Positions 13,997 through 49,816 of a DNA stretch of 64,000 nucleotides are shown piece by piece. The DNA is from Octopus sinensis (Eukaryota). Below the pieces are notes generated by a model that was not told where the DNA came from, searched no databases, and saw only the letters and a list, made by a program, of their open reading frames with translations. Location of the stretch: the NCBI RefSeq assembly GCF_006345805.1, contig NC_042999.1, positions 21,638,001 through 21,702,000 of the forward strand, given 5' to 3'. Both the position numbers and the translations under genes were made by a program. The stretch's first letter is position 1; every line of letters starts with the position of its first letter.

Positions 13997-16060
13997 CTAA
14001 ATCTCGTTATCGATATCATTTGCGTTCAGCCGTCCTATAAAACGTTCCCAAAACATTTCTTCATATTGTTCGTCGTTCGGCCATTCGAGGTACGTTTTCT
14101 GTTTCAGTAAAATTCCAAGCCTTTTAGTTTGTAAATTCGACGGAATTTCATTTAACAAAACAGGAATGATAATATCGTAGTGCTCTTCTAAGATCTTTTG
14201 CTGGGCAATACTTGCTTCAAACTGGCACCAGCTACTCTGAGCAAAATCATTTGACAACACTAGAACAACCTTACGGCTTTGTTGCATGCTGTCTACGATA
14301 TTATCAACAATATCGTTTCCAACCAAAAAGTCCCTGTCATGCAAACATAAATTGAAATGGTTTTCTTCTTCTATAATGGGTAAAAGTTTATTCAGAACCC
14401 AGTTGACGTCAGTGCTGCAATAACATATGAACGCATCGTACTTATATTGGCCATTATTAACGAGCGCTTTGTATTTTCTCTTTCTTACTAATGATTGGTA
14501 AATACAGAGGCGAATCGACCATCGTTTTGTATATGATAATATTGCTGTAAATACAAACATCACTGCCAGCACAGCTACAATCACTCCAGCAACGGCGATA
14601 GAAGATGGTTTGTTTATGTTTTCACAGTAATCCCAGCTTAGAGAAAAATTTCGCAAATGAACGTGACCAAGTGAGTTGGGACTGAAGCAACGGTAAATTT
14701 TGTAATTCTTCAATCGCCCTGCATTTTTCCGTGACCAGTCTCGAAACCAGAGTGTTTTGCAGTCACAAACGAACGGGTTGTTTGAGAGATCAATCTTCAG
14801 TTTCTCGTTGCTGAATAGTAACTGAGAAAATAATTTTGGATTAACATAGATAATTTTATTATGCTTTAACTCCAGTTTACGCAATACTCTCATAGCTGAG
14901 CAATTCGCTTTGTTCCATTTGCTAACAGTTGTATAACAAATGGAAAGTTTTGTAAGATTGTTCATATTACAAATCGAATCTGGAACACTTCTAACCTGCC
15001 CATCAGTAATCTTCAGATTTTCCAGTTTAGTCAGTGGCTTAAGTAAATCGTTGGCGTTTATGTTACTGACATTTCTCAGAATCAAATTTCTTAGCTGTGT
15101 GCACGACTTTAATAACGAAGAGGGTTTGCCTTCGTTAACATCAACATGAATGTTAATTAGCTCCACTGATTCCAATAATTTGAGTTTGAAGACGTTTCGC
15201 TCAAATCTTATGATACGGTGATTACGAGATACTAAACTTACTGCTCGTAGATGTTTCAATTTCTGGAAAACATCCGAGCTGATTAAATAGATATCACCAA
15301 CATAGATACCCAGTGTATGTAGACGGTCTAATCCTTTGAAAAAATTGCTGTTTAGGTAAGTAAGTCCTGATAAACCTAAGAAAAGCTTTTCAAGTTTTGG
15401 GTAAAATATAAATCCTGATTCATTTCTAAATGTTGGTAAAATTGAAATTTCGTTATGATACAAATCTAGATAAGTCAAATTAGGAAGATATCCCCAGTCG
15501 GTAACTCTGGTAATACCGTCTCTTTGAAGAACAAGTTGTTCTAATCGATCTATACCGGTGAAATAGCTGCCATCAAAACGTAACATTGTAGATTGCTCTA
15601 TGATAATTGTTGAAACGTTTGTTCCTCTGAGACCATCAAATATATCTTTAGTGAAATATTCCAAATTCATTTCAGTGAAAACTAAATTTTTTGTAGTCAG
15701 TGGTAAACCAAACAGCACATTTCGTAATTCTGGAAGGGGCAACTGAAGATTAATAATTTCGAATTCTTCTATATACTTCAAAGACTTAAATACATCATTA
15801 GTAGATGTCTTAAGCCGGGTGGATTTAATTAACAAATGTTCTAGTAAGGGCAGTTCTGTCAAATTTTGAAAGGTTTGGTTGTCCCAATTGTGAATTTTTA
15901 GATCTGTGAATGTTACAGATGTAGTGTAATTTGGTAAAATTGGAACAAAATGGCTCCCATAACATAAGTATCTATCTTTTCTTATAACGCGACATCCTTT
16001 CACTTCACTACATGAAACATGACATATCAGGAAGAGTACGCTTAGAGACAAAGAATTCAT
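13997..16060 (-). CDS. Toll-like receptor paralog 1 (single cysteine cluster type), 687 aa, single coding exon
   Basis: Hydrophobic N-terminus; about 15 LxxLxL repeats; LRRCT NNPFVCDC...YRC...YC; TM about aa 487-510; TIR from aa 541 with YDAFICY, LCLHDRDFLVG, SRKVVLVLS, WCQFE and FW motifs. Confidence 0.97.
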   Translation of the reverse strand: MNSLSLSVLFLICHVSCSEVKGCRVIRKDRYLCYGSHFVPILPNYTTSVTFTDLKIHNWDNQTFQNLTELPLLEHLLIKSTRLKTSTNDVFKSLKYIEEFEIINLQLPLPELRNVLFGLPLTTKNLVFTEMNLEYFTKDIFDGLRGTNVSTIIIEQSTMLRFDGSYFTGIDRLEQLVLQRDGITRVTDWGYLPNLTYLDLYHNEISILPTFRNESGFIFYPKLEKLFLGLSGLTYLNSNFFKGLDRLHTLGIYVGDIYLISSDVFQKLKHLRAVSLVSRNHRIIRFERNVFKLKLLESVELINIHVDVNEGKPSSLLKSCTQLRNLILRNVSNINANDLLKPLTKLENLKITDGQVRSVPDSICNMNNLTKLSICYTTVSKWNKANCSAMRVLRKLELKHNKIIYVNPKLFSQLLFSNEKLKIDLSNNPFVCDCKTLWFRDWSRKNAGRLKNYKIYRCFSPNSLGHVHLRNFSLSWDYCENINKPSSIAVAGVIVAVLAVMFVFTAILSYTKRWSIRLCIYQSLVRKRKYKALVNNGQYKYDAFICYCSTDVNWVLNKLLPIIEEENHFNLCLHDRDFLVGNDIVDNIVDSMQQSRKVVLVLSNDFAQSSWCQFEASIAQQKILEEHYDIIIPVLLNEIPSNLQTKRLGILLKQKTYLEWPNDEQYEEMFWERFIGRLNANDIDNEI

Positions 16061-16634
16061 TGTGCAGAAATTTAGTTACGAATTTGGATGGGTTGATCTA
16101 CAAAGCTTCATTCTATTCAGGTCGTCAACATTTCATCCATATCTGAAATAGTTCAAACGAGACACTACACTTAATATTACAAATAAAAGAATTTATATTA
16201 CAAAACACTAAAACTAAATCACATTCGGACAATGTAGCATGAAATAAACATATTTTAGTGAATCCTATAAGGGACAATATTTAGTATATAATATGTTAAA
16301 TTTTAAATTCAGCAATATGCTTCTTGCTCTAGATCTAGAGGGGAAGAAATTATTATCGATTATTCCAAATCTATTGATAATAAACACCACTAATAAGGAC
16401 ACAATGCTAATTTTACGGGAGAGTAAAGACAAGTACATCGACCCTCACCTATATATTTCTCGTATTTATTTTTCTGACAAAGACTCTTAAAGTTGCCCTT
16501 GAGAAGCCATACACCCTTAAACGCAACTCGTATATACCTTAAAACATATCATTCATACTCTGAGGCTCAGCTTCATCAGCCATGCATCCCTCTCAACTGA
16601 AAAGCAAATGTAAGATCGTAGTCTTATATATATA

Positions 16635-30177: not shown

Positions 30178-32241
30178 CTAAATCTCGTTGTCGATATCAT
30201 TTGCGTTCAGCCGTCCTATAAAACGTTCCCAAAACATTCCTTCATATTGAGTTTCATTCGGCCATTCAAGGTACGTTTTCTGTTTCAGTAAAATTCCAAG
30301 CCGATTAGTCTGTAAATTCGACGGAATTTCATTTAACAAAACAGGAATGATAATATCGTAGTGCTCTTCTAAGATCTTTTGCTGGGCAATACTTGCTTCA
30401 AACTGGCACCAGCTACTCTGAGCAAAATCATTTGACAACACTAAAACAACCTTACGGCTTTGTTGCATGCTTTCTACGATATTATCAACAATATCGTTTC
30501 CAACCAAAAAGTCCCTGTCATGCAAACATAAATTGAAATGGTTTTCTTCTTCTATAATGGGTAAAAGTTTATTCAGAACCCAGTTGACGTCAGTGCTGCA
30601 ATAACATATAAACGCATCGTACTTATATTGGCCATTATTAACGAGCGCTTTGTATTTTCTCTTTCTTACTAATGATTGGTAAATACAGAGGCGAATCGAC
30701 CATCGTTTTATATATGATAATATTGCTGTAAATACAAACATCACTGACAGCACAGCTACAATCACTCCAGCAACGGCGATAGAAGATGGTTTGTTTATAT
30801 TTTCACAGTAATCCCAGCTTAGAGAAAAATTTCGCAAATGAACGTGACCAAGTGAGTTGGGACTGAAGCAACGATAATATTTGTAATTCTTCAATCGCCC
30901 TGCATTTCTCCGTGACCAGTCTCGAAACCATAGTGTTTTGCAGTCACAAACGAACGGGTTGTTTAAGAGATTAATCTTCAGTTTCTCGTTGCTGAATAGT
31001 AAATGTGAAAATAATTCTTGATTAACGTAGATAATTTTATTGTGCTCTAAGTCAAGTTTACGCAATACTCTCATAGCTGAGCAATTCGCTTTGTTCCATT
31101 TGCTAACATCTGTGTGAGAAATGGTAAGTTCTCTAAGCTTATTCATATTACAAATCGCATCTGGAACTTTGCTAACCTGCCCATCAGTAATCTGCAGATT
31201 TTCCAGTTTAGTCAGTGGCTTAAGTAAATCGTTGGCGTTTATGTTACTGACATTTCTCAGAATCAAATTTCTTAGCTGTGTGCACGACTTTAATAACGAA
31301 GACGTTTTGCCTTCGTTAACATCAACATGAATGTTAATTAGCTCCACTGACTCCAATAATTTGAGTTTGAAGACGTTTCGCTCAAATCTTAATCTAGTGT
31401 GCTTAAGAGATACTAAACTTACTGCTCGTAGACATTTCAAATTCTGGAAAACATCCGATTTGAATAAAATGATATGACCAACAAAGATACCCAGTGTATG
31501 TAGACGGTCTAATCCTTTGAAAAAATTGCTGTTTAGGTAAGTAAGTCCTGATAAACCTAAAAACAGCTCTTTAAGTTTTGGGTAAAATATAAATCCTGAT
31601 TCGTTTCTAAATTTTGGCAAAGTTGAAATTTCGTTATGATAGAAATCTAGATAAGTCAAATTAGGAAGATATCCCCAGTCGGTAACTGTGGTAATACCGT
31701 CTCTTTGAAGAACAAGTCTATCTAATCGATCTATACCTGTGAAATAGTTGCCATCAAAACGTAACATAGTAGATTTCTCTATGTAAATAATTGAAATGTT
31801 AGTTCCTCTGAGACCATCAAATATATCTTTATTCATATTTTCCAGTTGCATATCAGCTAATATTAATTTTTTTGTAGTCAGTGGTAAACCAAACAGCACA
31901 TTTCGTAATTCTGGAAGGGGCAAATGAACAGTAATAAGTTCAAATTCTTGTATATACTTCAAAGACTTAAATACATCATTAGTAGATGTCTTAAGCCAGG
32001 TGGTTTTAATTAACAAATGTTCTAGTAAGGGCAGTTCTGTCAAATTTTGAAAGATTTGGTTGTCCCAATTGTCAATTTTTAGGTCTGTGAATGTTACAGA
32101 TGTAGTGAAATTTGGTAAAGTTGGAACAAAATGGCTACCATCACATAAGTATCTATTTTTTCTGAAAACGTGACATTCTTTCACTTTACTACATGAAACA
32201 TGAAATATCAGGAGGAGTACGCTTAGAGACAAAGACTTCAT
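30178..32241 (-). CDS. Toll-like receptor paralog 2, 687 aa
   Basis: Same architecture, colinear with paralog 1 without indels; TIR differs from paralog 1 at 5 of 147 residues by eye. Confidence 0.97.
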   Translation of the reverse strand: MKSLSLSVLLLIFHVSCSKVKECHVFRKNRYLCDGSHFVPTLPNFTTSVTFTDLKIDNWDNQIFQNLTELPLLEHLLIKTTWLKTSTNDVFKSLKYIQEFELITVHLPLPELRNVLFGLPLTTKKLILADMQLENMNKDIFDGLRGTNISIIYIEKSTMLRFDGNYFTGIDRLDRLVLQRDGITTVTDWGYLPNLTYLDFYHNEISTLPKFRNESGFIFYPKLKELFLGLSGLTYLNSNFFKGLDRLHTLGIFVGHIILFKSDVFQNLKCLRAVSLVSLKHTRLRFERNVFKLKLLESVELINIHVDVNEGKTSSLLKSCTQLRNLILRNVSNINANDLLKPLTKLENLQITDGQVSKVPDAICNMNKLRELTISHTDVSKWNKANCSAMRVLRKLDLEHNKIIYVNQELFSHLLFSNEKLKINLLNNPFVCDCKTLWFRDWSRRNAGRLKNYKYYRCFSPNSLGHVHLRNFSLSWDYCENINKPSSIAVAGVIVAVLSVMFVFTAILSYIKRWSIRLCIYQSLVRKRKYKALVNNGQYKYDAFICYCSTDVNWVLNKLLPIIEEENHFNLCLHDRDFLVGNDIVDNIVESMQQSRKVVLVLSNDFAQSSWCQFEASIAQQKILEEHYDIIIPVLLNEIPSNLQTNRLGILLKQKTYLEWPNETQYEGMFWERFIGRLNANDIDNEI

Positions 32242-34375: not shown

Positions 34376-34406
<31 letters not shown>

Positions 34407-34409
34407 TAT

Positions 34410-34826
34410 AGAATTAATGTAAGGTGAAATTGTTTCGAAAAAAAATTTTAACAATGGCCAATATATTAAAAAATACCTTTAAAGGTTAAATTTATAAACA
34501 ACTTATAATAAGGGCAAACGAAAAAATTTCTAATACCAAATATGCCCAAATTAGACACACATGGATATATTTGGGGTACTTAATTGTGCTCAGAACTTAG
34601 TGTTTGGTTCTTCCATGGGTATGAGTAAGTATCTCATTTATTTCTTTGCCACATTTATCACTGACGAAGGGAGGGTTCTTACGAACTAACCCTGAAATCG
34701 GTCCGATATGGTAATAAAGGAAGTTTTTAGAAATATCTATCGACCTTTTTTGAGTAGCGTGCGGCTTGTGAAAAATCATATGGTTATGGACAGGGTGTCT
34801 AATTTCGGCATATTTGGAATTAGAAA
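34410..34826 (+). mobile_element. PLE remnant with inverted ends (duplicate at 27580-27990)
   Basis: 32-bp inverted repeats at 34527-34558 and 34795-34826 (30/32 match) enclosing a hammerhead motif. Confidence 0.45.
34656..34708 (+). ncRNA. Hammerhead motif in a PLE remnant
   Basis: UAUCA CUGACGA AGGG...GUUcuuacgAAC...CCCU GAA AUCGGU C CGAUA; one mismatch in stem I. Confidence 0.5.
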
Positions 34827-34870
34827 TACATATACATACATATATATATATATATATATACATATATATA

Positions 34871-35580
34871 TTGCTCTTACTCTGCGATAACATTCTCTCC
34901 TGATCTTTTCTTTCATCACTGAATGACTTATTCCGTCTCCTTCAATTACCCCGAGGTACTTGTAGCACTCCGCTGGGTCTAATTCTTTTATGACATTCTG
35001 CTGGTCAAGGTTAACGTTAGATATTTCTGTCATTTTTCCTTTGATAAAGGTAGCTTTTGCACATTTATCGACGCAAAAGTTCATTCTGATGTCATCACTG
35101 AATTGTTTAACAATCTCTAGTAAGCCCTGGAGTTGTTGGTAATTTTTTGCAAAGAGCTTAACTCATCCATATAAATGTTATCAAACATTTTGTATCCGTA
35201 CTACGCACCATTGTGCAATTTTGAGAGAGGTATTAAGGCTAAACAAAACAGGAGTGGTGATAGTGAGTCACCCTGGAAGATGCCACATGAAATTTTTACA
35301 TCACCAGCATTTAGAGATTCATTGCCACTGTTCAAAGTTAGTGTGGTTCTCCATGATCTCATACATACAGACAAAAAGTTTCGCAGAGTAGGTGCTATTT
35401 TATACATTTCCAGGCATTTCTTAATCCAGCTATGTGATAGGCTATCAAAAACCTTTTTATAGTCTGCCCAGGCTATTGATAAGTTTTTGTGTTGTTCATG
35501 ACAATCTTCCAAGTTCATCTTATTTATGAGTAGTTAATTTTACAACCATAGGATCCACGTCTACATTCTTTTTTACATCC

Positions 35581-35581
<1 letters not shown>
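34871..35581 (-). mobile_element. R4/Dong-like RT fragment (duplicate of 28017-28724)
   Basis: AWADYKKVFDSLSHSW, GIFQGDSLSPLLF, YKYLGV. Confidence 0.8.
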
Positions 35582-35618
<37 letters not shown>

Positions 35619-35954
35619 GTTGTTGTTGTTGTTGTTGTTGTTTTTGTTATTATCATCATCATCATCATCATCGTCATCGTCATCATCATTATTATTATTG
35701 TTGTTATTATTATTATTATTATCATTATTATTATTATTATTATTATTATTGATATTATTATTAAGATTATTATTGCGTTAGGGAGCAGTGCATGTCATCA
35801 AAGTGACATTGACATATAAATATACGAAGCCCAATATACGTATCATGGCTACCCGACTGATAAGATTTCGTAGGAATTTTAATATCAGCAACGGTGTTTT
35901 TGTATTATGTATGTATGTATGTATGTATGTATGTATGTATGTATGTATGTATGT

Positions 35955-36338
35955 ATTATTAGAATTGAAGATAGAAGGATTTCTAAGCAGATGCTCTATG
36001 GAGAACTTGTGAATGGAAGGATACTCCGGCAGAAACCAAGGCTACGATTTATTGTCATTGCCACATATGGAGGAAGCAGGTTAAGGAGGGAATCGACACT
36101 TTTGAGAGAGCACGTATCCAGCATGAAGAACTTAAGCGAACTGCGCGAAAGCGAACGGCTAATATAGTGAATGGGGAAAGCTTCTTCTGCAATGTTTGCT
36201 GTCGTGTATGCTTGTCAAGAGCAGGGCTCATTAGCCACCAACGGAGCCCCAAATGCAAAATATAAGTTAGTCTTAGAGCGCACAATGTTCCTGAAGGTCG
36301 GCAATGGTCTTCCTCGGTCACGAGTGGACGGCCATCAT
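35955..36338 (+). mobile_element. RTE 3' end duplicate with internal deletion
   Basis: Colinear with 29076-29523 but lacks about 66 nt. Confidence 0.85.
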
Positions 36339-36401
36339 GTATGTATGTATGTATGTATGTATGTATGTATGTATGTATGTATGTATGTATGTATGTATGT
36401 A

Positions 36402-38156: not shown

Positions 38157-40220
38157 CTAAATCTCGTTGTCGATATCATTTGCGTTCAGCCGTCCTATAA
38201 AACGTTCCCAAAACATTCCTTCATATTCTTCGTCGTTCGGCCATTCGAGATACGTTTTCTGTTTCAGTAGAATTCCAAGCCTATTAGTCTGTAAATTCGA
38301 CGGAATTTCATTTAACAAAACAGGAATGATAATATCGTAGTGCTCTTCTAAGATCTTTTGCTGGGCAATACTTGCTTCAAACTGGCACCAGCTACTCTGA
38401 GCAAAATCATTTGACAACACTAGAACAACCTTACGGCTTTGTTGCATGCTGTCTACGATATTATCAACAATATCGTTTCCAACCAAAAAATCCCTGTCAT
38501 GTAAACATAAATTGAAATGGTTTTCTTCTTCTATAATGGGTAAAAGTTTATTCAGAACCCAGTTGACGTCAGTGCTGCAATAACATATGAACGCATCGTA
38601 CTTATATGGGCCATTATTAACGAGCACTTTGTATTTTCTTTTTCTTACTAATGATTGGTAAATACAGAGGCGAGTCGACCATCGTTTTGTATATGATAAT
38701 ATTGCTGTAAATACAAACATCACTGCCAGCACAGCTACAATCACCCCAGCAACGGCGATAGAAGATGGTTTGCTTATATCTTCACAGTAATCCCAGCTTA
38801 GAGAAAAATTTCGCAAATGAATGTGACCAAGTGAGTTGGGACTGACGCAACGGTAAATTTTGTAATTCTTCAATCGCCCTGCATTTCTCTTTGACCAGTC
38901 TCGAAACCAGAGTGTTTTGCAGTCACAAACGAACGGGTTGTTTGAGAGATCAATATTCAGTTTCTCGTTGCTGAATAGTAAATGGGAAAATAATTTTGGA
39001 TTAACATAGATAATTTTATTATCCTTTAACTCCAGTGTACGCAATACTCTCATAGCTGAGCAATTCGCTTTGTTCCATTTGCTAACATCTGTGTTAGAAA
39101 TGGTAAGTTCTCTAAGCTTATTCATATTACAAATCGCATCTGGAACTTTACTAATATGCTCATCAGTAATCTTCAGACTTTCCAGTTTAGTCAGTGGCTT
39201 AAGTAAATCGTTGGCGTTTATGTTACTGACATTTCTCAGAATCAAATGTTGTAGCTGTGTGCACGACTTTAATAACGAAGACGGTTTGCCTTCGTTAACA
39301 ACAACATGAATGTTAATTAGCTCCACTGATACCCATGATTTGTTTTTGAAGACGTTTCGCTCAAATCTTAAGACATGGTGCTTAAGAGATTCTAAACTTA
39401 CTGTTCGTAGACTTTTCAAATTCTGGAAAACATCCGATTTGATTAAAGAGATATCCCCAACAAAGATACCCAATTTAGTTAGACCGTCAAATCCTTTGAA
39501 AAAATTGCTGTTTAGGTAATTAAATCCTGATAAACCTAAGAACAGCTTTTCAAGTTTTGGGTAAAATTTAATTCCTATTTCGTTTCTAAATTTTGGTAAA
39601 GTTGAAATTTCGTTATGATACAAATCTAGATAAGTCAAATTAGGAAGATATCCCCAGTCGGTAACTCTGGTAATACCGTCTCCTTGAAGAACAAGTTGGT
39701 CTAATTGATCCATACCGGTGAAATAGCTGCCATCAAAACGTACCATATTACATTTATTTATGAAAATTCTTGAAACGTTAGTTCCTCTGAGACCATCAAA
39801 TATATCTTTAGTCAAATATTCGAATTTCATTTCATTGAAAACTAATTTTTTTGTAGTCAGTGGTAAACCAAACAGCACATTTCGTAATTCTTGAAGGGGC
39901 AACCAAAGTTTAATAATTGCGACTTCTTGTATATACTTCAAAGACTTAAATACATCATTAGTAGATGTCTTAAGGACGGTGGACTTAATTAACAAATGTC
40001 CTAGTAAGGGCAGTTCTGTCAAATTTTGAAAGGTTTGGTTGTCCCAATTGTCAATATTTAGGTCTGTGAATGTTACAGCTGTAGTGTAATTTGGGAAAGT
40101 TGGAACAAAATGGCTCCCATAACATAAGTATCTATCTTTTTTTATAACGCGACATCCTTTCACTTCACTACATGAAACATGAAATATCAGGAGGAGTACG
40201 CTTAGAGACAAAGAATTCAT
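38157..40220 (-). CDS. Toll-like receptor paralog 3, 687 aa
   Basis: Same architecture; TIR differs from paralog 1 at 3 of 147 residues by eye. Confidence 0.97.
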   Translation of the reverse strand: MNSLSLSVLLLIFHVSCSEVKGCRVIKKDRYLCYGSHFVPTFPNYTTAVTFTDLNIDNWDNQTFQNLTELPLLGHLLIKSTVLKTSTNDVFKSLKYIQEVAIIKLWLPLQELRNVLFGLPLTTKKLVFNEMKFEYLTKDIFDGLRGTNVSRIFINKCNMVRFDGSYFTGMDQLDQLVLQGDGITRVTDWGYLPNLTYLDLYHNEISTLPKFRNEIGIKFYPKLEKLFLGLSGFNYLNSNFFKGFDGLTKLGIFVGDISLIKSDVFQNLKSLRTVSLESLKHHVLRFERNVFKNKSWVSVELINIHVVVNEGKPSSLLKSCTQLQHLILRNVSNINANDLLKPLTKLESLKITDEHISKVPDAICNMNKLRELTISNTDVSKWNKANCSAMRVLRTLELKDNKIIYVNPKLFSHLLFSNEKLNIDLSNNPFVCDCKTLWFRDWSKRNAGRLKNYKIYRCVSPNSLGHIHLRNFSLSWDYCEDISKPSSIAVAGVIVAVLAVMFVFTAILSYTKRWSTRLCIYQSLVRKRKYKVLVNNGPYKYDAFICYCSTDVNWVLNKLLPIIEEENHFNLCLHDRDFLVGNDIVDNIVDSMQQSRKVVLVLSNDFAQSSWCQFEASIAQQKILEEHYDIIIPVLLNEIPSNLQTNRLGILLKQKTYLEWPNDEEYEGMFWERFIGRLNANDIDNEI

Positions 40221-40787: not shown

Positions 40788-40846
<59 letters not shown>

Positions 40847-41612
40847 GAGTGTGTACAGAGTGGAGGTGAGTGCTCGTGGGTGTAGAGTTATCAGTCACGT
40901 TAGAAGATAGCATATCCGCCTAAATGAGAGTAATTCTTGAAGCTAAGATAGCATTCCATTCTTTATGATATTTATTTTATAATTTATTTCTAGTCTGGCT
41001 TCACAGAAGTCTTTCAGTCAATAGCTATACAGAGCAATTTAAGAGAGAGTTCTCCCTCGAGGATGAAATATGAAAATATACAGTAAAAACAGCAGCTGGT
41101 AAGGGTCAGATGTGCACAGAGGGACCAAAGCATATGGGGCTATTCCCGTTTGAAATACTGAGGAAACAACACGAAAATGTAAATGACCAACAGCTGTAGA
41201 AACTTCAGTCTCACAATGTCTCAACAATGCTTGACAGTTGGTACTTTTGCGTAATGGACAAGGTTGAAGTGACTAAAGCCCTGGGGATATTTTAATCATT
41301 TTGTTTAATAAGAGTAATGATAAAGAACATAAAGAAATACGAAGACGAGTTAAATTTGACTGCCACATATATTCCGCTGCTGAAAGGAAACACGGTAAAC
41401 ATGAATATTTCCGTTAATGAAAACACACAAGCCCTCGTGCAGCTGGAAGATGTCCGCGGGAAGAACACAAATCAAGACGACGAGGATCTCTCTTCACATT
41501 TCTATCCTCACAGAGGCAGCATATCAGAATGAAACTGCTCTCATGTCAAAGATCCAAACTCCATCATGTCGACTCTACACTCTGAGGAATTAGCGGGAAA
41601 AGCTTCTCCAAT

Positions 41613-41660
<48 letters not shown>

Positions 41661-41682
41661 TATTAAAATTATAATTTAGGGT

Positions 41683-42030
41683 CTCTAAGAGATAACACTA
41701 CGCAGGAAATAGCAGCCAAACCTTGACTCTAAAACCACACCAAAAGCCTACACAGCACCAAAACAAACGAGTAAAAATTTACTGGATGAGTCTAGATCCC
41801 GGACATCTGACTCCGCATAAGAAACGCCCCGCCTCATCAGTGGAATATACACAAATAGCACATAATAGCATATATTCCACTGATGTGGCTGGGCGTTTCT
41901 AATCAAGAGGTCCGGGATCTGGAGTTTTCCAGTAAATTTTTTTGTTCACTCCTCGTGATGTGTGGGCGTTTGGTGTGGTTTTAGAGTCAGGTTTTGGTTG
42001 CTATTTCCAGCGTGGTGGTAACATTTAGAT
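41683..42030. repeat. Palindromic element, paralog in unit 3
   Basis: Colinear with 19781-20148. Confidence 0.8.
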
Positions 42031-42369
42031 AGTTAGCAACTTCCTTGTCTTTCTCTCTAAGCTTTTCGTTCGCCTATTTTCCATGCGAGTACTTCTGTTC
42101 TATATGAAAGAGTGAAGCCGCCCAAGTATTGATAGCTTCGGTCTTATTCCGTCCATTTAATTTCGACTCTAGGATCAGTCTCAGTCTGCGCAAATTCTCC
42201 ACCTAAACTTTTTCTGTCATTTCTCTCTCCATCAATTTATACATTTCCAAAATCGTCGACAGAACTTATTCTTTGCCGAACTGCTAAGTTACGGGGACGT
42301 AAAAACACCAGCAACGGTTGTCAAGCCATGTCGGGGGAAAGACACAGACACCTGCATACACAGAGGTAC

Positions 42370-42412
<43 letters not shown>

Positions 42413-42767
42413 CATATATACGACGGAATTCTTTCAGTTTCCGTCTACCAAATCCACTCACAAGGCTTTGGTCGGCCCGAAGCTATAGTAGGAGACGCTT
42501 GCCCAGGGTGCCTTAGTAGTAGGACTGAACCCGGAACCATGTGGTTGGTAAGCAAGCTACTTACCACACAGCCACTCCTACTCCATTCCTTTGTTATAAT
42601 TATCTATATAATCGTAAGATATTTTTAATATACATACATACATATGTGTGGGTGGGTGTGCGCGCGTGCGTGGGGGTGTGTATGTGTATTTATACATACG
42701 CGTTTGAATACTGATGACTATAGATACATATACCTGTACATGTGTGGGTGTGTATATATATATCTCT

Positions 42768-44178
42768 CTATATAAAACTGAGAATTTGTGTCTGTCTGTC
42801 TGTCTGTCTGTCTGTGTGTTTCCCTAAAACCTGAGAACTACAAAACTAATTTCACTCAAATTTTACACATGCCTTACTAAGGGTCCGGGGAATGTCATCG
42901 ACAAAAATGTTCAATTTCTTGACTAGGGCGAGCCCTTAGCAATATCATATCTTCTCCACAATTTCAGTATTACGTGTTAAAAGTGAAACGAAAACATTTC
43001 TCTAATTTATGTCAGATACTTTCACTTTAATAATAAAAATAATAATAACAATTGAATTATATGTAGTAATTAATAATTAAAATAAAACTAAAGTATGATA
43101 TAATCGTAACATAATAAAAGTAAAAATAGCAATTGCTATAAAATTGCATCACTACCTTGAACTTGAATAAGTGGTTTCACATGAATGGGAATAATTTAAA
43201 AATAAAATTAGCGTGCAGAAATAGAATAGTCCAGATAGACTATTATACATAAAGGACTATAGCTTCAACTGCATACTGCTTTTTGTTGTTATTATTATTA
43301 CTGTTTAACTATTGTTATCACGGGTGTTGGTTCCTCGTAAGGGAAACGTTGTTGTGTTGCATTTGTTAAATAATTGTAAACCGTAACCCTCCCCCTTTGG
43401 GAGAAGGAGCTTTGGTTATTGTTTAAAAAGTGAATTATGTCCCTGTTTGTGGAAATTGACAATATTTTCACCGTTTACACGGAAGCATTTTTGTTAGAAT
43501 GCCTTCGATATAAGAAAGTCCAAAAATGAATTTCGCTGCAGCCGTCGGCGGGTGCGAACTCATTAAAATTAAAATGGAAGAAATACAAACCTATTTCGGA
43601 TTGATCACCGACAAAGACGGTGAATCTAGGATAACACCACCAAACGAAATAAAAAAAAATAGACTATTGTCTATAGTAGTATACAATGTAGAGAAGAAAA
43701 AAAGATTTGAACATCTGGAGGAAAGCACCATCGAAAAGTGTCTTGGTGCGACTATGAAAAATATCTAACCAGAGGCGGTAAATTCGGTACAATAGAAGCA
43801 AGGTTCGAGTCAACGGAGCGTGCAAAGGGGAAATATTTTATATTCACCTTTATATCTGGGACGTAGGAAGCCCCGGATACAAATTTAAAATGTCCCCCCC
43901 CCGAAGTAGAGGTAGGCTGTATTGTAGCCACACTTCTATGCAAGAGGGATGACAAGATACAATTGATCGAGATTACCATAGACGAGCCTACAATTCCAGT
44001 CTGTCATATATTTTGAGTATTGTTGTCACTTGCGATATCAAGATATAACTTTAAATTTTCTATATTATGTGTAGATGTATATATATATATATATATATAT
44101 ATAGATGTACATGTAATATGTACACATATACACATGCACTAGCAATATAAACCGGCAACGACGGGTCATACTGCCAGT
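42768..44178 (+). mobile_element. Possible non-autonomous Helitron/HINE-like element (partial paralog 20958-22150)
   Basis: 5' TC-TATATAAAA plus (GTCT)n tract; 3' CCGGCAACGACGGG...CCAGT resembles a hairpin + CTAG end. Confidence 0.35.
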
Positions 44179-44199
44179 ATATATATATATATATATATC

Positions 44200-45100
44200 T
44201 ATAGGGAGAATTCATAATAAAACACAAAATACGAAGACTGTGGTGTAGACAACAAACAGATGTATTAGTTTAACGCTCGGGAAGTGGAAAAGTCTTTAAC
44301 GTTAAAGAATTTTTCACTTTTTGCGCAGAAAGGAACACAGAAAGAAACAAGGAGAGAAAATGAAGAATGTGTAGTGGCAAGCGTTCTATCATGGCGAATG
44401 CCGGACAGAGGGGTCACACAGGAGATCTAGGAAGAAGGGGTGATAATAAAGTAGTGGTGATCCCAAAACGAATGTCTGTGTGTGAGTGTATGAGGGAACA
44501 TGTATGTTCGTGTGGAAGAAGTTTGGTGACCTTGAAGTGTGCGTGTGTGTAGGCGTAGGTGTGTAGATATGGAGCCGGGATGTTGTCCATGCTAGTGTGC
44601 GCGTGGTGGTGTGATGTGGTGCTGTTTGGTATGGTAGTGTATGGTGTAGAAGTGTGCGGTGTGGTGTGATGGAGTTTGGATGTGCAGGAGGCGATAGTGG
44701 GGAAAGCAATGGTGGGGTGTGGTTTAGGCTGCGTCTGGGGATAGGGTTGGGGTTTGTGGGTAGGCTGCGGGTGGGGTAGAGTTGGAGTATGTGTGCAGGC
44801 TGAGTTTGGGGCTAAAGGTGGGATTTTGTGTGGGTGGGTGTAAGGGATGGGATGAGGTTGGGATGGATAGCAAGAATTGTGAGACGTATATTTAGAAAAT
44901 ATGGTAGATTATAAGCAAGCAATTATTCTCCGAGATGAAGGTGAGGTGGGGTGCGAGTATACATCTTAGGTGGAATACATAATTTGCATACAAGCGTAAT
45001 TGTATTATACGGAGGTGCTTCTGCTATTATTGACTAAGACAATGTGTATTGTATATACTTTAACTTAAGTTCGTGTATGCATGCGGCTAGCGTTGTTGTG
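44200..45100 (-). mobile_element. Penelope-like pLTR fragment, family 2, ribozyme core destroyed
   Basis: Homologous to 10948-11510; absent from the paralog 1 unit. Confidence 0.45.
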
Positions 45101-45864
45101 AATATATATTTAAGTTAGTAAAAAAATTCAAAGGAGCCCTATAGCGACTCTTAAAATCAATAGTAAATCTTATGTAAACCCTTAACCTGTGTGCTGCAGA
45201 AATCCCGTTTCCAAGATTTTGAATATTTGGTTTCATTGAGTTTGTCGGAGTTATACAATTTATACTTAAGGAAATTCCTAAATAACACATTCTTTATTCG
45301 GGCATTATCTGTAGTATTAGATTGTTAGTTAGTTATTAGACTATATAGAAGATATTGGCAATTTTAGTTTTGAGTTTTGTATCAGGGATATAAAATAGAG
45401 CTTGGTGGTTATATGAAGCATGGGTGTTAAATATCTTCTCATTGGCATATAAGATTGAAATTCTAATAGAAATGGCCGTTACCATGCTATCGAGGGATAA
45501 TCAAGGACGATTAGAGAGAATATGTAAGAACTGAAGAGTTTGGTTGGGTTTCCTATATGGATAGTGAAGATTAATATTAAGATTAAGTATGATATCCATT
45601 TATTATCCATTTATTATCCTTTTCAAATGCAATATTTAAATTATAATTTTTAAAGAATTTTATCAAAAATAATAATAACACCATCGAAAAATAGGTAGGA
45701 ATGAGAACCCAGGTTCGAAATTTTTCCACAAGACACCTGGAGAACGCTGAAGTGTATATCAGCCGACAGTTGTGTTAACAAGAAACAAGATATCCCTCGA
45801 ATGTAAATATTGTAAAGAATGTACATAATTCCTCATCTCTTAAGCATAGAAAAGTTTCACTTGC

Positions 45865-46158
45865 CGAAAAAATATATATGGAACAATTATCAACCAGCAA
45901 CTGTATAATACACAACAATGGTGATACTGTTACCGGTTTATTGTTGCATAAAACTCGGTGACTGAGTGATAATATTGTTTTCGATACAGGAAGCAAAATA
46001 GCAACAAGGACCATTATCAATTAGTATTAATTATTACATAAAGAGAAGTTAAAAATTGAAAGCATTTGTACCATCCCAGTAATTAAATGTGCAAGTAATT
46101 ACTAATATGAGAGAGGCTTTACTTAGTCTGAAATCCTCCACACTTTGACCTACATTGC
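45865..46158 (-). promoter_or_regulatory. Predicted exon 1 / promoter block of TLR paralog 3 (GC donor)
   Basis: Paralog of 22859-23150; donor reads CG|GCAAGTG (GC at 45864-45863). Confidence 0.55.
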
Positions 46159-47606: not shown

Positions 47607-47752
47607 TAATTTCTCTATAAGATGTTGTTAGAAAAATTCCTCTTTGTCCAAAACAACATCAAATAAAATATATTCAGTTTTGTTTTCTTACGGAAAATGT
47701 GTGCCGATACATTTGCTTTTCTCTTTTTGAATGAATCCATTACCCATCAGTT

Positions 47753-49816
47753 CTAAGCCTCATTATCGGTTTCATTTTCGTTCAGACGTTTTACAAATTG
47801 TTCCCAAAACTTTTCTTCATATTGGCTTTCATTCGGCCAATTCAAGAACGTTTTATGATTTTGTAAATCAACAAGACTTTCCGTTCGTAAATTCGAAGGA
47901 ATTTCATTTAATAAAACAGGAATAATAATATCGTAGTGCTCTTCTAAGATCTTTTGCTGGGCAATGCTTGCTTCAAACTGGCACCAGCAATTCTGAACAA
48001 AATCCGGTGACAAAATTAAAACAACCTTACGGCTCTGTTGCATGCAGTCCACGACATTATCAATAATATTGCTGCCAACAAAAACGTCCCTGTCATGTAA
48101 ACATAAATTGAAATGGTTTTCTTCTTCTATAATGGGTAAAAGTTTATTCAGAACCCAGTTGACATCAGCATTACAGTAACATACAAGCGCATCATGCGTA
48201 TATTGGCCATCATTAACGAGTGTTTTGTATTTTCTCTTTCTTACTAATGATTGGTATGAACAGAAATGAATTGACCATCGATTTGCATATGATAATATTG
48301 CCAAACATACAAAAATAACAACCAGTACGGCTATAATTCCACCAAACATAGCGATAAGAGACGGTTTCTGTCTATTTTCACAGTAATCCCAGCTTAGAGA
48401 AAAATTTTCCAAATGGATGTAATCAGATGTATCCGGAATAAAGCAACGATATGTCTTGTAATTTTTCAATCTCCCTGCATTTTTCCGTGACCAATCTCGA
48501 AACCAGAGTGTTTTGCAGTCACAAACGAACGGGTTGTTTGAGAGATCAATATTCAGTTTCTCGTTGTTGAATAGTAAATGGGAAAATAATTCTTGATTAA
48601 CGTAACGAATTTTATTATCATTTAACTCCAGTTTACGCAATACTCTCATAACTGAGCAATTCGCTTTGTTCCATTTGCTAACATTTGTGTAAATAATGGA
48701 AAGTCCTGTAAGATTATTCATATTACAAATCGCATCTGGAATTTTGCTAACCTGCCCATCAGTAATCTCCAGATTTTCCAGTTTAGTCAGTGGCTTAAGT
48801 AAATCGTTGGCGTTTATGTTACTGACATTTCTCAGAATCAAATTTCTTAGCTGTGTGCACGACTTTAATAACGAAGACGGTTTGCCTTCGTTAACATCAA
48901 CATGAATGTTAATTAGCTCCACTGATTCCAATAATTTGAGTTTGAAGACGTTCTGCTCAAATCTTAAGACATGGTGCTTAAGAGATACTAAACTTACTGC
49001 TCGTAGATATTTCAATTTCTGGAAAACATCCGATCTGAATAAAACGATATGACCAACAAAGATACCCAGTTTATGTAGACCGTCTAATCCTTTAAAAAAA
49101 TTGCTGTTTAGGTAAGTAAATCCTGATAAACCTATGAATAACTTTTCGAGTTTTGGGTAAAATATAAATCCAGATCCATTTTTAAATTTTGGCAAGGTTG
49201 AAATTTCGTTATGATACAAATCTAGATAAATCAAATTAGGAAGATATCCCCAGTCGGTAACTCTGGTAATACCGTCTCCTTGAAGAACAAGTTGTTCTAA
49301 TCGATCTATACCGGTGAAATAGCTGCCATCAAAACGTACCATATTACATCTACTTATGAAAATACGTGAAACGTTAGTTCCTCTGAGACCATCAAATATA
49401 TCTTTATTCATATTTTCCAGCTGCATTTCAGATAATACTAATTTTATTGTTGTCAGTGGTAAACCAAGCAACACATTTCTTAATTCCAGAAGAGGTAACG
49501 GAACAGTAATAAGTTCAAATTCTTGTATATACTTCAAAGACTTAAATACATCATTGGTAGATGTGTTAAGCCAGGTGGATTTAATTAACAAATGTTCTAG
49601 TAAGGGCAGTTCTGTCAAATTTTGAAAGGTTTGGTTGTCCCAATTGTCAATTTTTAGATCTATGAATGTAACAGCTGTAGTGTCATTTGGAAAATTTGGA
49701 ACAAAAGTGCTTCCTTTGCATGACCAACTCCCTTTTCTGAAAACGTGACATTCTTTCGTTTCACCATATGAAACATGAATTATCAGGAAGAGTACGGTTA
49801 GTGATAAGGGATTCAT
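47753..49816 (-). CDS. Toll-like receptor paralog 4, 687 aa, divergent TM/TIR
   Basis: Same length and architecture; box 1 reads HDALVCY and BB loop HDRDVFVG; 3' flank unrelated to copies 1-3. Confidence 0.96.
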   Translation of the reverse strand: MNPLSLTVLFLIIHVSYGETKECHVFRKGSWSCKGSTFVPNFPNDTTAVTFIDLKIDNWDNQTFQNLTELPLLEHLLIKSTWLNTSTNDVFKSLKYIQEFELITVPLPLLELRNVLLGLPLTTIKLVLSEMQLENMNKDIFDGLRGTNVSRIFISRCNMVRFDGSYFTGIDRLEQLVLQGDGITRVTDWGYLPNLIYLDLYHNEISTLPKFKNGSGFIFYPKLEKLFIGLSGFTYLNSNFFKGLDGLHKLGIFVGHIVLFRSDVFQKLKYLRAVSLVSLKHHVLRFEQNVFKLKLLESVELINIHVDVNEGKPSSLLKSCTQLRNLILRNVSNINANDLLKPLTKLENLEITDGQVSKIPDAICNMNNLTGLSIIYTNVSKWNKANCSVMRVLRKLELNDNKIRYVNQELFSHLLFNNEKLNIDLSNNPFVCDCKTLWFRDWSRKNAGRLKNYKTYRCFIPDTSDYIHLENFSLSWDYCENRQKPSLIAMFGGIIAVLVVIFVCLAILSYANRWSIHFCSYQSLVRKRKYKTLVNDGQYTHDALVCYCNADVNWVLNKLLPIIEEENHFNLCLHDRDVFVGSNIIDNVVDCMQQSRKVVLILSPDFVQNCWCQFEASIAQQKILEEHYDIIIPVLLNEIPSNLRTESLVDLQNHKTFLNWPNESQYEEKFWEQFVKRLNENETDNEA

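What the first reader, a model, noticed from the sequence alone, without database searches (positions are those of the whole stretch)
13997..49816. Four TLR paralogs with mosaic ectodomains: all three pairings alternate along the LRRs
Seen by aligning the four 687-aa ORFs (no indels). Pairing 1+3 vs 2+4: aa 22-26 (GCRVI vs ECHVF), 127-137 (EY.T vs MQLENMN), 256/260 (D..I vs H..F), 408-409 (PK vs QE). Pairing 1+2 vs 3+4: aa 151-160 (STML vs RIFI..CNMV), 180, 233, 246, 249, 400, 422. Pairing 1+4 vs 2+3: aa 267 and 368-378 (NLT.LSI.YT vs KLRELTIS.TD). No single tree explains this. Switching incompatible sites is the established signature of gene conversion or unequal recombination. Inference: the cluster diversifies ligand-binding LRR cassettes by patchwise exchange while keeping the frame and length fixed.
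Basis: partly seen in the sequence, partly recalled or inferred. Interest (0 to 1): 0.85.

Follow-up and report, generated by a model that had tools for sequence, protein, structure and literature searches.

The report
Octopus Toll-like receptor genes swapping patches
Four neighbouring Toll-like receptor genes of the octopus Octopus sinensis have repeatedly copied short stretches of their pathogen-sensing part into one another while their signalling part stayed separate, a known way for immune gene clusters to evolve that I found no report of in cephalopods.

Summary
Four intact, gap-free 687-codon ORFs lie on the minus strand. All three 2+2 pairings occur (28/15/15 nucleotide sites), in runs. 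The N gap is intergenic, 331 nt upstream of copy 2, and breaks no ORF.

The window is Octopus sinensis. O. vulgaris, assembled independently, carries orthologs of all four copies with the same mosaics (11-31 nt differences), so the copies are not assembly or haplotype chimeras.

With the two O. bimaculoides genes as reference, the cluster holds two old paralog types: A (copies 1-3) and B (copy 4).
- TM/TIR and both flanks follow orthology.
- CDS nt ~120-1371 (LRR ectodomain) groups by species.
- Synonymous divergence between A and B is 0.11-0.14 there, against 0.41-0.48 in TM/TIR.

Recombination tests are significant. Two adjacent A/B cassettes occur in all four combinations. One 20-67 nt tract was exchanged in O. 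vulgaris after the species split.

Best explanation: repeated short-tract germline gene conversion that reshuffles LRR variants. Variable residues concentrate on the predicted concave face. Adaptive diversification is inferred, not shown. Nothing here points to somatic shuffling.

This is a new member of a known kind (compare TLR1/TLR6 and avian TLR2A/B), with the opposite domain polarity. Interest is moderate.

The parts
13997..16060 (-). Copy 1 (Os1), type-A TLR gene. Single exon, 687 codons: signal peptide, 16 LRRs, LRRCT, TM, TIR.
   Evidence: ORF. Pfam LRR_8 and TIR. AF2 model with pLDDT 84. O. vulgaris ortholog L003:9611-11674 differs at 11 nt.
30178..32241 (-). Copy 2 (Os2), type-A TLR gene. 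Carries B-type patches at CDS nt 381-410 and nt 1986-1990.
   Evidence: O. vulgaris ortholog L007:9611-11674 differs at 31 nt.
38157..40220 (-). Copy 3 (Os3), type-A TLR gene. Carries a B-type patch at CDS nt 445-478.
   Evidence: O. vulgaris ortholog L005:9494-11557 differs at 16 nt.
47753..49816 (-). Copy 4 (Os4), type-B TLR gene. Its TM/TIR, 5' flank and 3' flank are orthologous to O. bimaculoides gene B. Its ectodomain is shared with copies 1-3.
   Evidence: O. vulgaris ortholog L004:10001-12064 differs at 14 nt.
48446..49696 (-). Exchange zone in copy 4 (CDS nt 121-1371, LRR1 to LRRCT). The same CDS interval is 14690-15940 in copy 1, 30871-32121 in copy 2 and 38850-40100 in copy 3.
   Evidence: In the best-fitting segment (nt 36-1371) quartet sites split orthology/concerted 26/52 (with Os1); 3' of it, together with the few sites 5' of nt 36, 62/1. 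Synonymous divergence Os4 vs Os1-3 is 0.11-0.13. The ectodomain tree groups by species, 100/100.
47753..48445 (-). Copy 4 TM, TIR and C-terminal tail (CDS nt 1372-2064), which stayed outside the A/B exchange. The equivalent in copy 1 is 13997-14689.
   Evidence: 123-135 differences to copies 1-3 against 81 to O. bimaculoides gene B. The tree shows A and B clades at 100/100. AU test rejects ObA+ObB as a clade, p=1e-7.
31832..31861 (-). Cassette at CDS nt 381-410 (aa 127-137) in copy 2, B type (MQLENMN). It is shared with copy 4 (49407-49436) and O. bimaculoides gene B. Copies 1 and 3 carry the A type.
   Evidence: nucleotide alignment; identical codons.
39743..39776 (-). Cassette at CDS nt 445-478 (aa 149-160) in copy 3, B type (RIFI..CNMV). 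It is shared with copy 4 (49339-49372), OvX and O. bimaculoides gene B. Copies 1 and 2 carry the A type (STML).
   Evidence: Together with the previous cassette, all four combinations exist (A/A, B/A, A/B, B/B).
31110..31138 (-). Derived cassette at CDS nt 1104-1132 (aa 368-378, KLRELTIS.TD) in copy 2. It is shared with copy 3 (39089-39117) and OvX. Copies 1 and 4 and both O. bimaculoides genes keep NLT.LSI.YT.
   Evidence: It is incompatible with the derived GCRVI cassette shared by copies 1, 3 and OvX (15983-15996 and 40143-40156).
32572..32671 (.). Assembly gap. It is intergenic, 331 nt upstream of the copy-2 ATG, at the junction of two repeat units.
   Evidence: The O. vulgaris counterpart is about 6.6 kb, mostly the U-block repeat, with no TLR copy.
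40817..46158 (.). 'U block', a repeat upstream of copy 3. A paralogous block lies upstream of copy 1 (18214-23152, about 89-94% identical). The copy-2 equivalent is presumably inside the gap.
   Evidence: Self-BLAST; O. vulgaris L007:3411-8978.
34376..36400 (.). 'D block', a repeat downstream of copy 3. A paralogous block lies downstream of copy 2 (27542-29585, 91-95% identical).
   Evidence: Self-BLAST.
13253..13645 (.). (TGTA)n-type microsatellite (the finder reports the unit in rotations: GTAT, ATGT, TGTA) about 350 nt 3' of copy 1. The same repeat lies 3' of copy 2 (29522-29885) and copy 3 (37668-37839), and just right of the gap (32839-33011).
   Evidence: Tandem Repeats Finder. Any role in recombination is speculation.

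Best explanation
**What it is.** The window is a tandem cluster of four intact single-exon Toll-like receptor genes of Octopus sinensis. Copies 1-3 are recent duplicates of an old 'type A' gene. Copy 4 is the old 'type B' paralog. The A/B split predates the divergence from O. bimaculoides.

**What happened (shown).** Stretches of the ectodomain-coding part (CDS nt ~120-1371, LRR1 to LRRCT) have been copied non-reciprocally between the genes, including between the A and B types. This happened repeatedly, in short internal tracts of tens to a few hundred nt, as germline interlocus gene conversion.

**What stayed out (shown).** Exchange between the A and B types essentially stopped 3' of nt ~1371, leaving TM, TIR and both flanks with their orthologs.

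**Result (shown).**
- Each gene is a different mosaic of a shared pool of LRR variants.
- The ectodomains of A and B evolve in concert within a lineage.
- New combinations of neighbouring cassettes arise.
- Most mosaics were already fixed before O. sinensis and O. vulgaris separated, and at least one small tract was exchanged afterwards.

**What is inferred.**
- Selection on the ligand-binding concave face keeps or favours the variants, so the exchange acts as combinatorial diversification.
- Sequence divergence or selection keeps the two TIR types apart.
For: **Identity.**
- Pfam LRR_8 plus TIR.
- AF2 model with pLDDT 84, 16 LRR strands, a TM helix at 487-511 and a TIR fold.
- The best PDB fold matches are all TLRs or RP105.
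- The organism comes from the source contig and its NCBI names.

**The copies are real.** O. vulgaris orthologs differ at 11, 31, 16 and 14 nt and show the same mosaics.

**Domain-level incongruence.**
- The ectodomain tree joins ObA+ObB (100/100) and all O. sinensis/O. vulgaris copies including type B (100/100).
- The TM-TIR tree gives A and B clades (100/100).
- AU tests reject the opposite grouping in each partition (p=0.005 and 1e-7).

**Synonymous divergence.**
- Os4 vs Os1-3: 0.11-0.13 in the ectodomain, 0.41-0.48 in TM-TIR.
- Orthologs between the species lineages: about 0.19-0.25.

**Quartet sites.** Orthology/concerted counts are 62/1 outside the best-fitting concerted segment (almost all of these sites lie 3' of nt 1371) and 26/52 inside it (nt 36-1371), where the two classes alternate in blocks.

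**Both lineages homogenise.** In nt 721-1080, ObA-ObB differ at 26 sites and Os4-Os1/2 at 18-23, against 39-65 between species.

**Flanks.**
- 3' flank: A and B are unalignable (about 47% different), while orthologs differ by 12-14%.
- 5' flank: Os4-ObB differ by 8%, Os4 vs A copies by 12-15%.
- The exchanged part is therefore internal, which means conversion rather than a single crossover.

**Fine scale.**
- PHI, runs and single-tree simulation tests are significant.
- Two multi-site A/B cassettes 35 nt apart occur in all four combinations.
- Two derived multi-site cassettes (GCRVI in 1, 3, X; KLRELTIS.TD in 2, 3, X) are mutually incompatible.
- Paired copies use identical codons at 28 of 33 sites.

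**Still happening.**
- Ov3 differs from Os3 at 5 sites within nt 1356-1375.
- Each of these changes makes it identical to Ov2.
- Two of the shared states occur only in O. vulgaris copies 2 and 3.
- P is about 1e-4 that 5 of 16 differences cluster this way by chance.

**Surface.**
- Variable residues occupy 44-45 of 80 predicted exposed xxLxLxx positions, against 70-71 of 316 elsewhere (OR 4.2-4.5, p about 1e-8).
- The repeat register was checked against the model's strands.
Against: - The strict GENECONV-style scan is only borderline.
- Clustering of patterns is not significant once tightly linked sites are merged.
- There is only one genome per species, so fixed differences cannot be told from polymorphism.
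- There is no outgroup beyond O. bimaculoides, so the direction of most exchanges and the lineage in which 'concerted' sites changed are not polarised.
- The O. bimaculoides loci contain N runs and could hide further copies.
- Positive selection is not demonstrated. pN/pS at exposed codons is 1.0-2.3 with Fisher p>=0.09, and recombination would bias codon-model tests.
- The 3' limit of exchange could reflect low similarity rather than selection.
Confidence: 0.88

Rival explanations
1. Assembly artefact: the copies, especially 2 and 3 on either side of the N gap, are two haplotypes of one locus placed in tandem, or chimeric joins of haplotypes.
For: The gap sits exactly at the junction of two repeat units that are 90.5% identical (26374-32571 against 33436-40543). 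The homology of copy 2's upstream region runs right up to the gap edge.
Against: - The independent O. vulgaris assembly has separate orthologs of copy 2 (31 nt differences) and copy 3 (16 nt differences), 15.7 kb apart, each with the same mosaic.
- Copies 2 and 3 differ at 155 nt.
- Orthologous non-coding sequence on both sides of the gap is 96-98% identical to O. vulgaris.
Confidence: 0.02
2. No recombination: the incompatible patterns come from parallel substitutions under similar selection (convergence) and from rate differences between domains.
For: - The ectodomain evolves fast (omega about 0.7-1.9).
- Many shared sites are nonsynonymous and lie on exposed positions.
- Clustering is weak after merging adjacent sites.
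Against: - Paired copies use identical codons at 28 of 33 sites, including two-base codon differences (ATA/TTC).
- Nine synonymous informative sites exist.
- Synonymous divergence itself is 3-4 times lower in the ectodomain than in TM-TIR for A vs B.
- Simulation on a single tree with gamma rates never reached the observed number of incompatible sites (maximum 22 against 30).
- Tree incongruence has 100% support, and AU tests reject the alternatives.
Confidence: 0.03
3. Unequal crossing-over (reciprocal exchange between misaligned copies) made hybrid genes and is the main source of the mosaics, rather than gene conversion.
For: - Copy number does change. O. vulgaris has a fifth gene (OvX) between copies 2 and 1, and a TLR relic fragment downstream of Ov2.
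- The units share long flanking repeats (U and D blocks) that could mispair.
Against: - Copy 4 keeps B-type sequence on both sides of the exchanged zone: the 5' flank with CDS nt 1-120, and TM/TIR with the 3' flank.
- Inside the zone, orthologous and concerted blocks alternate at a 100-300 nt scale.
- The cassettes are 14-34 nt long.
- A single crossover cannot give internal patches.
Confidence: 0.07
4. A dedicated diversification system, somatic or programmed, VLR-like: LRR cassettes are shuffled in haemocytes or at high rate in the germline.
For: Only the mosaic pattern itself and the concentration of variation on the concave face.
Against: - All genes are complete and intact.
- The 64 kb hold no partial LRR cassettes (tblastn, E<=1e-3).
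- The mosaics are 98.5-99.5% identical between two species, so turnover is slow: one clear and one possible small tract since the split.
Confidence: 0.02

Closest known systems
Gene conversion between mammalian TLR1 and TLR6, and avian TLR1A/B and TLR2A/B (Kruithof et al. 2007, PMC2077338; Huang et al. 2011, PMC3125219)
   Same: - These are tandem TLR paralogs.
- In part of the gene, paralogs within a species are more alike than orthologs. The rest follows orthology.
- Conversion occurred independently in several lineages.
- Identical codon usage was used to exclude convergence.
   Different: - The polarity is reversed. In vertebrates the converted part is the C-terminal LRRs, TM and TIR (plus the N-terminus in TLR2A/B), and the ligand-binding part stays orthologous.
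- Here the LRR ectodomain is exchanged and TM/TIR stay apart.
- Vertebrate tracts are long (0.6-1.2 kb) and nearly identical. Here there are many short, older patches among four or five genes, giving mosaics rather than one homogenised block.
Patchwork (mosaic) evolution of tandem plant LRR resistance-gene clusters and of MHC or KIR genes by short-tract gene conversion
   Same: - Short sequence exchanges among tandem paralogs reshuffle variants.
- Variation concentrates on solvent-exposed xxLxLxx residues of the LRR.
- Non-recognition domains are more conserved.
   Different: - These are different protein families and kingdoms.
- This cluster is tiny (4-5 genes).
- Positive selection has not been demonstrated here.
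Sp185/333 immune gene cluster of the purple sea urchin, bounded by microsatellites (Miller et al. 2010, PMC3091723)
   Same: - It is a tight tandem cluster of small intron-poor immune genes with shared flanks and microsatellites at the unit edges.
- Gene conversion or duplication was proposed as the source of diversity.
- Here a (TGTA)n-type repeat lies 3' of each type-A copy.
   Different: - The protein family is unrelated.
- The role of the microsatellites is speculative in both cases.
Lamprey and hagfish variable lymphocyte receptors (somatic LRR cassette assembly)
   Same: Diversity is made by copying LRR-coding cassettes by a gene-conversion-like process.
   Different: - VLR genes are incomplete in the germline and are surrounded by hundreds of partial cassettes. 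Assembly is somatic.
- Here the genes are complete, no spare cassettes exist in the window, and the mosaics are inherited.

Membership tests
Toll-like receptor (single cysteine-cluster type) | Extracellular LRR solenoid | tested here: met
   Pfam LRR_8 E=5e-14. Sixteen LxxLxLxxN repeats match 16 predicted strands. The top fold matches are TLR5, RP105, TLR8 and TLR3.
Toll-like receptor (single cysteine-cluster type) | C-terminal cap with a CxC...C...C cluster, then one transmembrane helix | tested here: met
   C432, C434, C458 and C479 are invariant or nearly invariant in alignment A1. The model has a helix at 487-511.
Toll-like receptor (single cysteine-cluster type) | Cytoplasmic TIR domain | tested here: met
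   Pfam PF01582, E=3e-20 for copy 1 and 3e-19 for copy 4. Caveat: the BB-loop reads RDFLVG/RDVFVG, with V where most relatives in alignment A1 have P (consensus RDFxPG).
Toll-like receptor (single cysteine-cluster type) | Ligand-induced signalling through MyD88/NF-kB | not testable with these tools
   Needs experiments.
Vertebrate TLR13 orthology (the NCBI name of these genes) | Orthologous relationship to vertebrate TLR13 | tested here: inconclusive
   Vertebrate proteins named TLR13 are only 24-29% identical, and arthropod Toll-receptor 9 scores as well. The name is a best-hit label. No phylogeny was made.
Interlocus gene conversion / concerted evolution of tandem paralogs | Paralogs within a species closer than orthologs in one segment, the reverse in another, with supported tree conflict | tested here: met
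   100/100 support on both trees; AU p=0.005 and 1e-7.
Interlocus gene conversion / concerted evolution of tandem paralogs | Signal present at synonymous sites and in codon identity (not convergence) | tested here: met
   Synonymous divergence 0.11-0.13 against 0.41-0.48. Identical codons at 28 of 33 sites.
Interlocus gene conversion / concerted evolution of tandem paralogs | Exchanged tract is internal: unconverted sequence on both sides | tested here: met
   Copy 4 is B-orthologous in the 5' flank, in CDS nt 1-120, in TM/TIR and in the 3' flank.
Interlocus gene conversion / concerted evolution of tandem paralogs | Significant recombination statistics | tested here: met
   PHI p=0.0018 to <=0.0002. 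Single-tree simulation p<0.001. My GENECONV-like scan was borderline. The published programs (GENECONV, RDP, GARD) were not available.
Interlocus gene conversion / concerted evolution of tandem paralogs | New events seen in pedigrees or populations | not testable with these tools
   There is only one assembly per species. Indirect evidence: one post-speciation tract in O. vulgaris.
VLR-like somatic LRR cassette assembly | Incomplete germline gene flanked by arrays of partial LRR cassettes | tested here: not met
   Four complete ORFs. No further TLR/LRR fragments in 64 kb.
VLR-like somatic LRR cassette assembly | Somatic sequence change in immune cells | not testable with these tools
   Needs haemocyte against germline sequencing. 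Near-identity of orthologs across species argues against it.

The most novel reading that the evidence does not exclude
The cluster is a germline cassette-exchange system kept by selection. Conversion between the A copies and the B copy is frequent enough that individual octopuses carry different LRR mosaics and copy numbers. That would be a population-level receptor repertoire of the MHC or plant R-gene kind. The two TIR types are kept apart so that the same recognition surfaces feed two signalling outputs.
Probability: 0.2. Interest if true: 0.65.

Novelty: new member of a known kind. Interest (0 to 1): 0.45.

Why it matters
**Evolution of cephalopod immunity.** Cephalopods have no adaptive immunity, and little is known about how their innate receptors evolve. 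This cluster shows that octopus TLR ectodomains are reshuffled by gene conversion among tandem paralogs, while two distinct signalling domains are preserved. That is the mirror image of the vertebrate TLR1/TLR6 case. It offers a small, tractable locus (4-5 single-exon genes, no indels) for asking whether conversion diversifies or homogenises recognition surfaces.

**Practical consequences.**
- Trees built from the full-length genes will mislead about orthology.
- The current gene models are unreliable: one chimeric 'isoform' and several truncated O. vulgaris models.
- Copy number differs between sister species.

Tried and rejected
- **Haplotig false duplication of copies 2 and 3 across the gap.** I considered this seriously because of the self-BLAST layout. 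I rejected it once the O. vulgaris orthologs of both copies were found.
- **OvX (P0006) as the ortholog of copy 2.** Rejected: they differ at 156 nt. The true ortholog, P0072, turned up through the cluster look-up.
- **Exact-protein look-up of copy 2 in other assemblies.** It found nothing, so there is no independent read-based confirmation within O. sinensis.
- **Strict GENECONV-like scan.** It gave only borderline tracts, because the tracts are short and old.
- **Merging adjacent sites in the runs test.** This removed significance. I report it as a caveat.
- **Pairwise pN/pS on exposed codons.** It was above 1 in eight of the nine pairs tested (0.99 for Os1-Os2) but not significant. I do not claim positive selection.
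- **tRNA scan of the window.** It found nothing.
- **Literature search.** It found no paper on gene conversion in cephalopod TLRs. The O. sinensis TLR survey by Chen et al. 2024, cited in PMC12521104, is not in the searched library, and I did not try to fetch it.

Full report
**1. What is in the window**

Four ORFs of exactly 687 codons lie on the minus strand at 13997-16060 (copy 1), 30178-32241 (copy 2), 38157-40220 (copy 3) and 47753-49816 (copy 4). They align without indels.

Each encodes the following:
- a signal peptide;
- 16 leucine-rich repeats;
- a C-terminal cysteine cap;
- one transmembrane helix;
- a TIR domain.

The support is Pfam LRR_8 and TIR, an AlphaFold model with mean pLDDT 84, and best PDB fold matches that are all TLRs or RP105.

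The window comes from a 174-Mb Octopus sinensis chromosome. NCBI calls the genes 'toll-like receptor 13', a best-hit label.

**2. The assembly gap (tested first, as asked)**

- The only N run, 32572-32671, is intergenic. It lies 331 nt upstream of the copy-2 start codon and is in no ORF.
- Left of it, copy 2's upstream region matches copies 1 and 3 right up to the gap edge.
- Right of it come (CA)n, a (TGTA)n repeat, and sequence downstream of copy 3.
- In O. vulgaris the two sides are about 6.6 kb apart (L007:2658-9280). Most of that interval is a repeat ('U block') that also lies upstream of copies 1 and 3, and it holds no TLR copy.
- The gap therefore probably hides several kb of repeat. 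The two sides are not contiguous, but nothing about the four coding sequences depends on it.

**3.

There are 58 informative nucleotide sites: 28 for 1+3|2+4, 15 for 1+2|3+4 and 15 for 1+4|2+3. Their order along the gene is CBBBBACBBBBBBBBBBBBAAAAAABCAAABBCCCACCCCABBBACBABABCCBBBCC.

Tests in favour:
- PHI permutation: p=0.0018 (whole CDS) and <=0.0002 (ectodomain, or seven sequences).
- Pattern switches: 24 against 36.7 expected, p=0.00024.
- 1000 alignments simulated on the best single tree with gamma rates gave 8.7+-3.1 minority-pattern sites (maximum 22), against 30 observed.

Caveats:
- After merging same-pattern sites <=5 nt apart, the runs test gives p=0.15.
- My strict GENECONV-like scan is borderline.

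**4. Not an artefact**

I fetched the homologous genes of O. vulgaris (independent assembly OX597816.1) and O. bimaculoides.
- O. vulgaris has full-length orthologs of all four copies, differing at 11, 31, 16 and 14 nt. They show the same mosaics and the same gene order.
- This excludes chimeric misassembly. It also excludes copies 2 and 3 being two haplotypes placed on either side of the gap.
- All 11 genes in three species keep 687 aligned codons with no indel.

**5.

O. bimaculoides has two genes, ObA and ObB. The table gives nucleotide differences by region.

| Region | Comparison | Differences |
|---|---|---|
| TM-TIR (nt 1321-2061) | copies 1-3 vs ObA | 38-51 |
| TM-TIR (nt 1321-2061) | copy 4 vs ObB | 90 |
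| TM-TIR (nt 1321-2061) | A vs B types | 116-145 |
| Ectodomain (nt 121-1320) | copy 4 vs copies 1-3 | 102-118 |
| Ectodomain (nt 121-1320) | copy 4 vs its ortholog ObB | 144 |
| Ectodomain (nt 121-1320) | ObA vs ObB | 127 |
| Ectodomain (nt 121-1320) | ObA vs copies 1-3 | 138-155 |

So A (copies 1-3) and B (copy 4) are old paralogs, yet in the ectodomain the paralogs within a species are closer than the orthologs.

Maximum-likelihood trees:
- The ectodomain groups by species lineage (100/100 for both groups).
- TM-TIR groups by A/B orthology (100/100).
- AU tests reject the opposite grouping in each partition (p=0.005 and 1e-7).

Synonymous divergence shows the same, so this is not convergence or constraint:
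- copy 4 vs copies 1-3: 0.11-0.13 in the ectodomain and 0.41-0.48 in TM-TIR;
- orthologs between the species lineages: about 0.19-0.25.

Quartet-informative sites (Os4, ObB, an A copy, ObA):
- orthology/concerted counts are 62/1 outside the best-fitting concerted segment; almost all of these sites lie 3' of nt 1371;
- inside that segment (nt 36-1371) the counts are 26/52;
- blocks alternate: concerted at nt 121-240, 481-600 and 721-1080; orthologous at about 300-480, 600-700 and 1200-1320.

In nt 721-1080, ObA-ObB differ at 26 sites and Os4-Os1/2 at 18-23. Between-species pairs differ at 39-65. Both lineages therefore homogenised this block independently.

Flanks:
- The 300 nt 3' of the stop codon are unalignable between A and B (about 47% different). 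Orthologs differ by 12-14% there.
- In the 330 nt 5' of the ATG, copy 4 is closest to ObB (8% against 12-15%).
- Copy 4 is thus type B on both sides of the exchanged zone. That requires internal non-reciprocal tracts (gene conversion), not a single unequal crossover.

**6. Fine-scale mosaics**

| Cassette (CDS nt) | B type in | A type in |
|---|---|---|
| 381-410 | ObB, copy 4, copy 2 | ObA, copies 1 and 3 |
| 445-478 (35 nt further on) | ObB, copy 4, copy 3, OvX | ObA, copies 1 and 2 |

All four combinations of these two multi-site cassettes exist.

Two derived cassettes are mutually incompatible:
- GCRVI (nt 65-78) in copies 1, 3 and OvX;
- KLRELTIS.TD (nt 1104-1132) in copies 2, 3 and OvX.

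At 28 of the 33 amino-acid 2+2 sites the paired copies use the same codons.

OvX is a fifth O. vulgaris gene lying between copies 2 and 1, with no counterpart in the window. It is another mosaic, with a copy-4-like block at nt 601-720 (4 differences against 10-13 to the A copies).

**7. Tempo**

Most mosaics predate the O. sinensis/O. vulgaris split, since orthologs are 98.5-99.5% identical. Exchange has not stopped, however.
- Five of the 16 differences between Os3 and Ov3 fall in nt 1356-1375.
- Each of these changes makes Ov3 identical to Ov2. Two of the shared states are found only in O. vulgaris copies 2 and 3.
- The tract is 20-67 nt long. The chance that 5 of 16 differences cluster like this is about 1e-4.
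- A second, weaker candidate is an Ov1-like 'RS' patch in Ov2 at nt 1071-1074.

**8. Does it diversify recognition?**

- Among copies 1-3 the ectodomain has dN of about 0.083-0.107 against dS of 0.05-0.09. In the TIR domain (aa 521-660) omega is about 0.1.
- Variable residues occupy 44-45 of 80 predicted exposed xxLxLxx positions, against 70-71 of 316 other ectodomain positions (OR 4.2-4.5, p about 1e-8). I checked the repeat register against the strands of the structural model.
- pN/pS at the exposed codons is 1.0-2.3, but no pair is individually significant.
- So the exchange and the new cassette combinations are shown. That selection favours them is a reasonable inference, not a result.
- Between A and B the same process is also homogenising.

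**9. Comparison with what is known**

- Gene conversion between tandem TLR paralogs is well documented for mammalian TLR1/TLR6 (PMC2077338) and avian TLR1A/B and TLR2A/B (PMC3125219).
- There the converted part is the C-terminal LRRs, TM and TIR (plus the N-terminus in TLR2A/B), and the ligand-binding part stays orthologous.
- The octopus cluster has the opposite polarity. It shows many short patches among four or five genes rather than one long homogenised block. In that respect it resembles the patchwork evolution of plant LRR resistance-gene clusters (my own knowledge, not checked here).
- The (TGTA)n-type repeats 3' of each type-A copy recall the microsatellite-bounded Sp185/333 cluster of sea urchins (PMC3091723). 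Any role for them is speculation.
- It is not VLR-like. The genes are complete, there are no spare cassettes, and the mosaics are inherited.
- My searches found no report of gene conversion in cephalopod TLRs. A 2024 survey of 14 O. sinensis TLRs exists (cited in PMC12521104), but it is not in the searched library and I did not try to fetch it.

**10. Verdict**

- The adaptive and somatic extensions are unproven and unsupported, respectively.
- This is a new member of a known kind, of moderate interest.

Noticed in passing
window 39716 (copy 3, CDS nt ~505) and 31737 (copy 2, same CDS position): NCBI protein XP_036356772.1 ('toll-like receptor 13 isoform X3') is a chimera. Residues 1 to about 169 come from copy 3 and the rest from copy 2. 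The join is made across the assembly gap at homologous cryptic splice sites (copy 3 CCG|GTATGG, copy 2 CACAG|GT). Copy 3's own protein sequence is not in the protein collection.
   Followed up: partly
L001:9611-11674 (O. vulgaris OX597816.1, about 22.914 Mb): O. vulgaris has a fifth intact gene (OvX) between the orthologs of copies 2 and 1. There is no counterpart in the O. sinensis window. The copy 2 to copy 1 distance is about 57 kb in O. vulgaris against 16 kb here. This is a copy-number difference between sister species.
   Followed up: partly
L007:13086-13438: A frameshifted relic of a TLR N-terminus (aa 27-144) lies 1.4 kb downstream of the O. vulgaris copy-2 ortholog. It is absent from the corresponding place in the window.
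   Followed up: no
window 13253-13645, 29522-29885, 37668-37839, 32839-33011: A (TGTA)n-type microsatellite (reported by the finder as GTAT, ATGT or TGTA) lies a few hundred nt 3' of each type-A copy, and again just right of the assembly gap. No such repeat was reported (TRF score >=150) in the 3.7 kb between copy 4's stop codon and the U block.
   Followed up: no
L006:10001-12064 and L005:9494-11557: O. bimaculoides gene B has a premature stop at codon 668 and loses the last 20 residues. The O. vulgaris copy-3 ortholog has lost its stop codon and is extended by two residues. The O. vulgaris gene models for copies 1, 2, 3 and X are truncated at the N-terminus (520-557 aa), although the full 687-codon ORFs are intact.
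   Followed up: partly
window copies 1-4, aa 576-581 (for example copy 1, about 14318-14335): The TIR BB-loop reads RDFLVG (type A) or RDVFVG (type B), with valine where most relatives in the protein alignment have proline (consensus RDFxPG). The effect on signalling is unknown.
   Followed up: no
copy 2 against L007:9611-11674: The copy-2 ortholog pair is two to three times more diverged (31 nt) than the other three pairs (11-16 nt). In the ectodomain it has 15 nonsynonymous and 2 synonymous differences.
   Followed up: no
window 54802-55293, 59668-59883, and dispersed copies at about 2549-2806, 5799-6231, 8051-8477, 10511-10912, 56650-57086 and 61150-61560: There are several families of short interspersed repeats and 110-184-bp tandem repeats around the cluster. 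No tRNA genes were found in the window.
   Followed up: no
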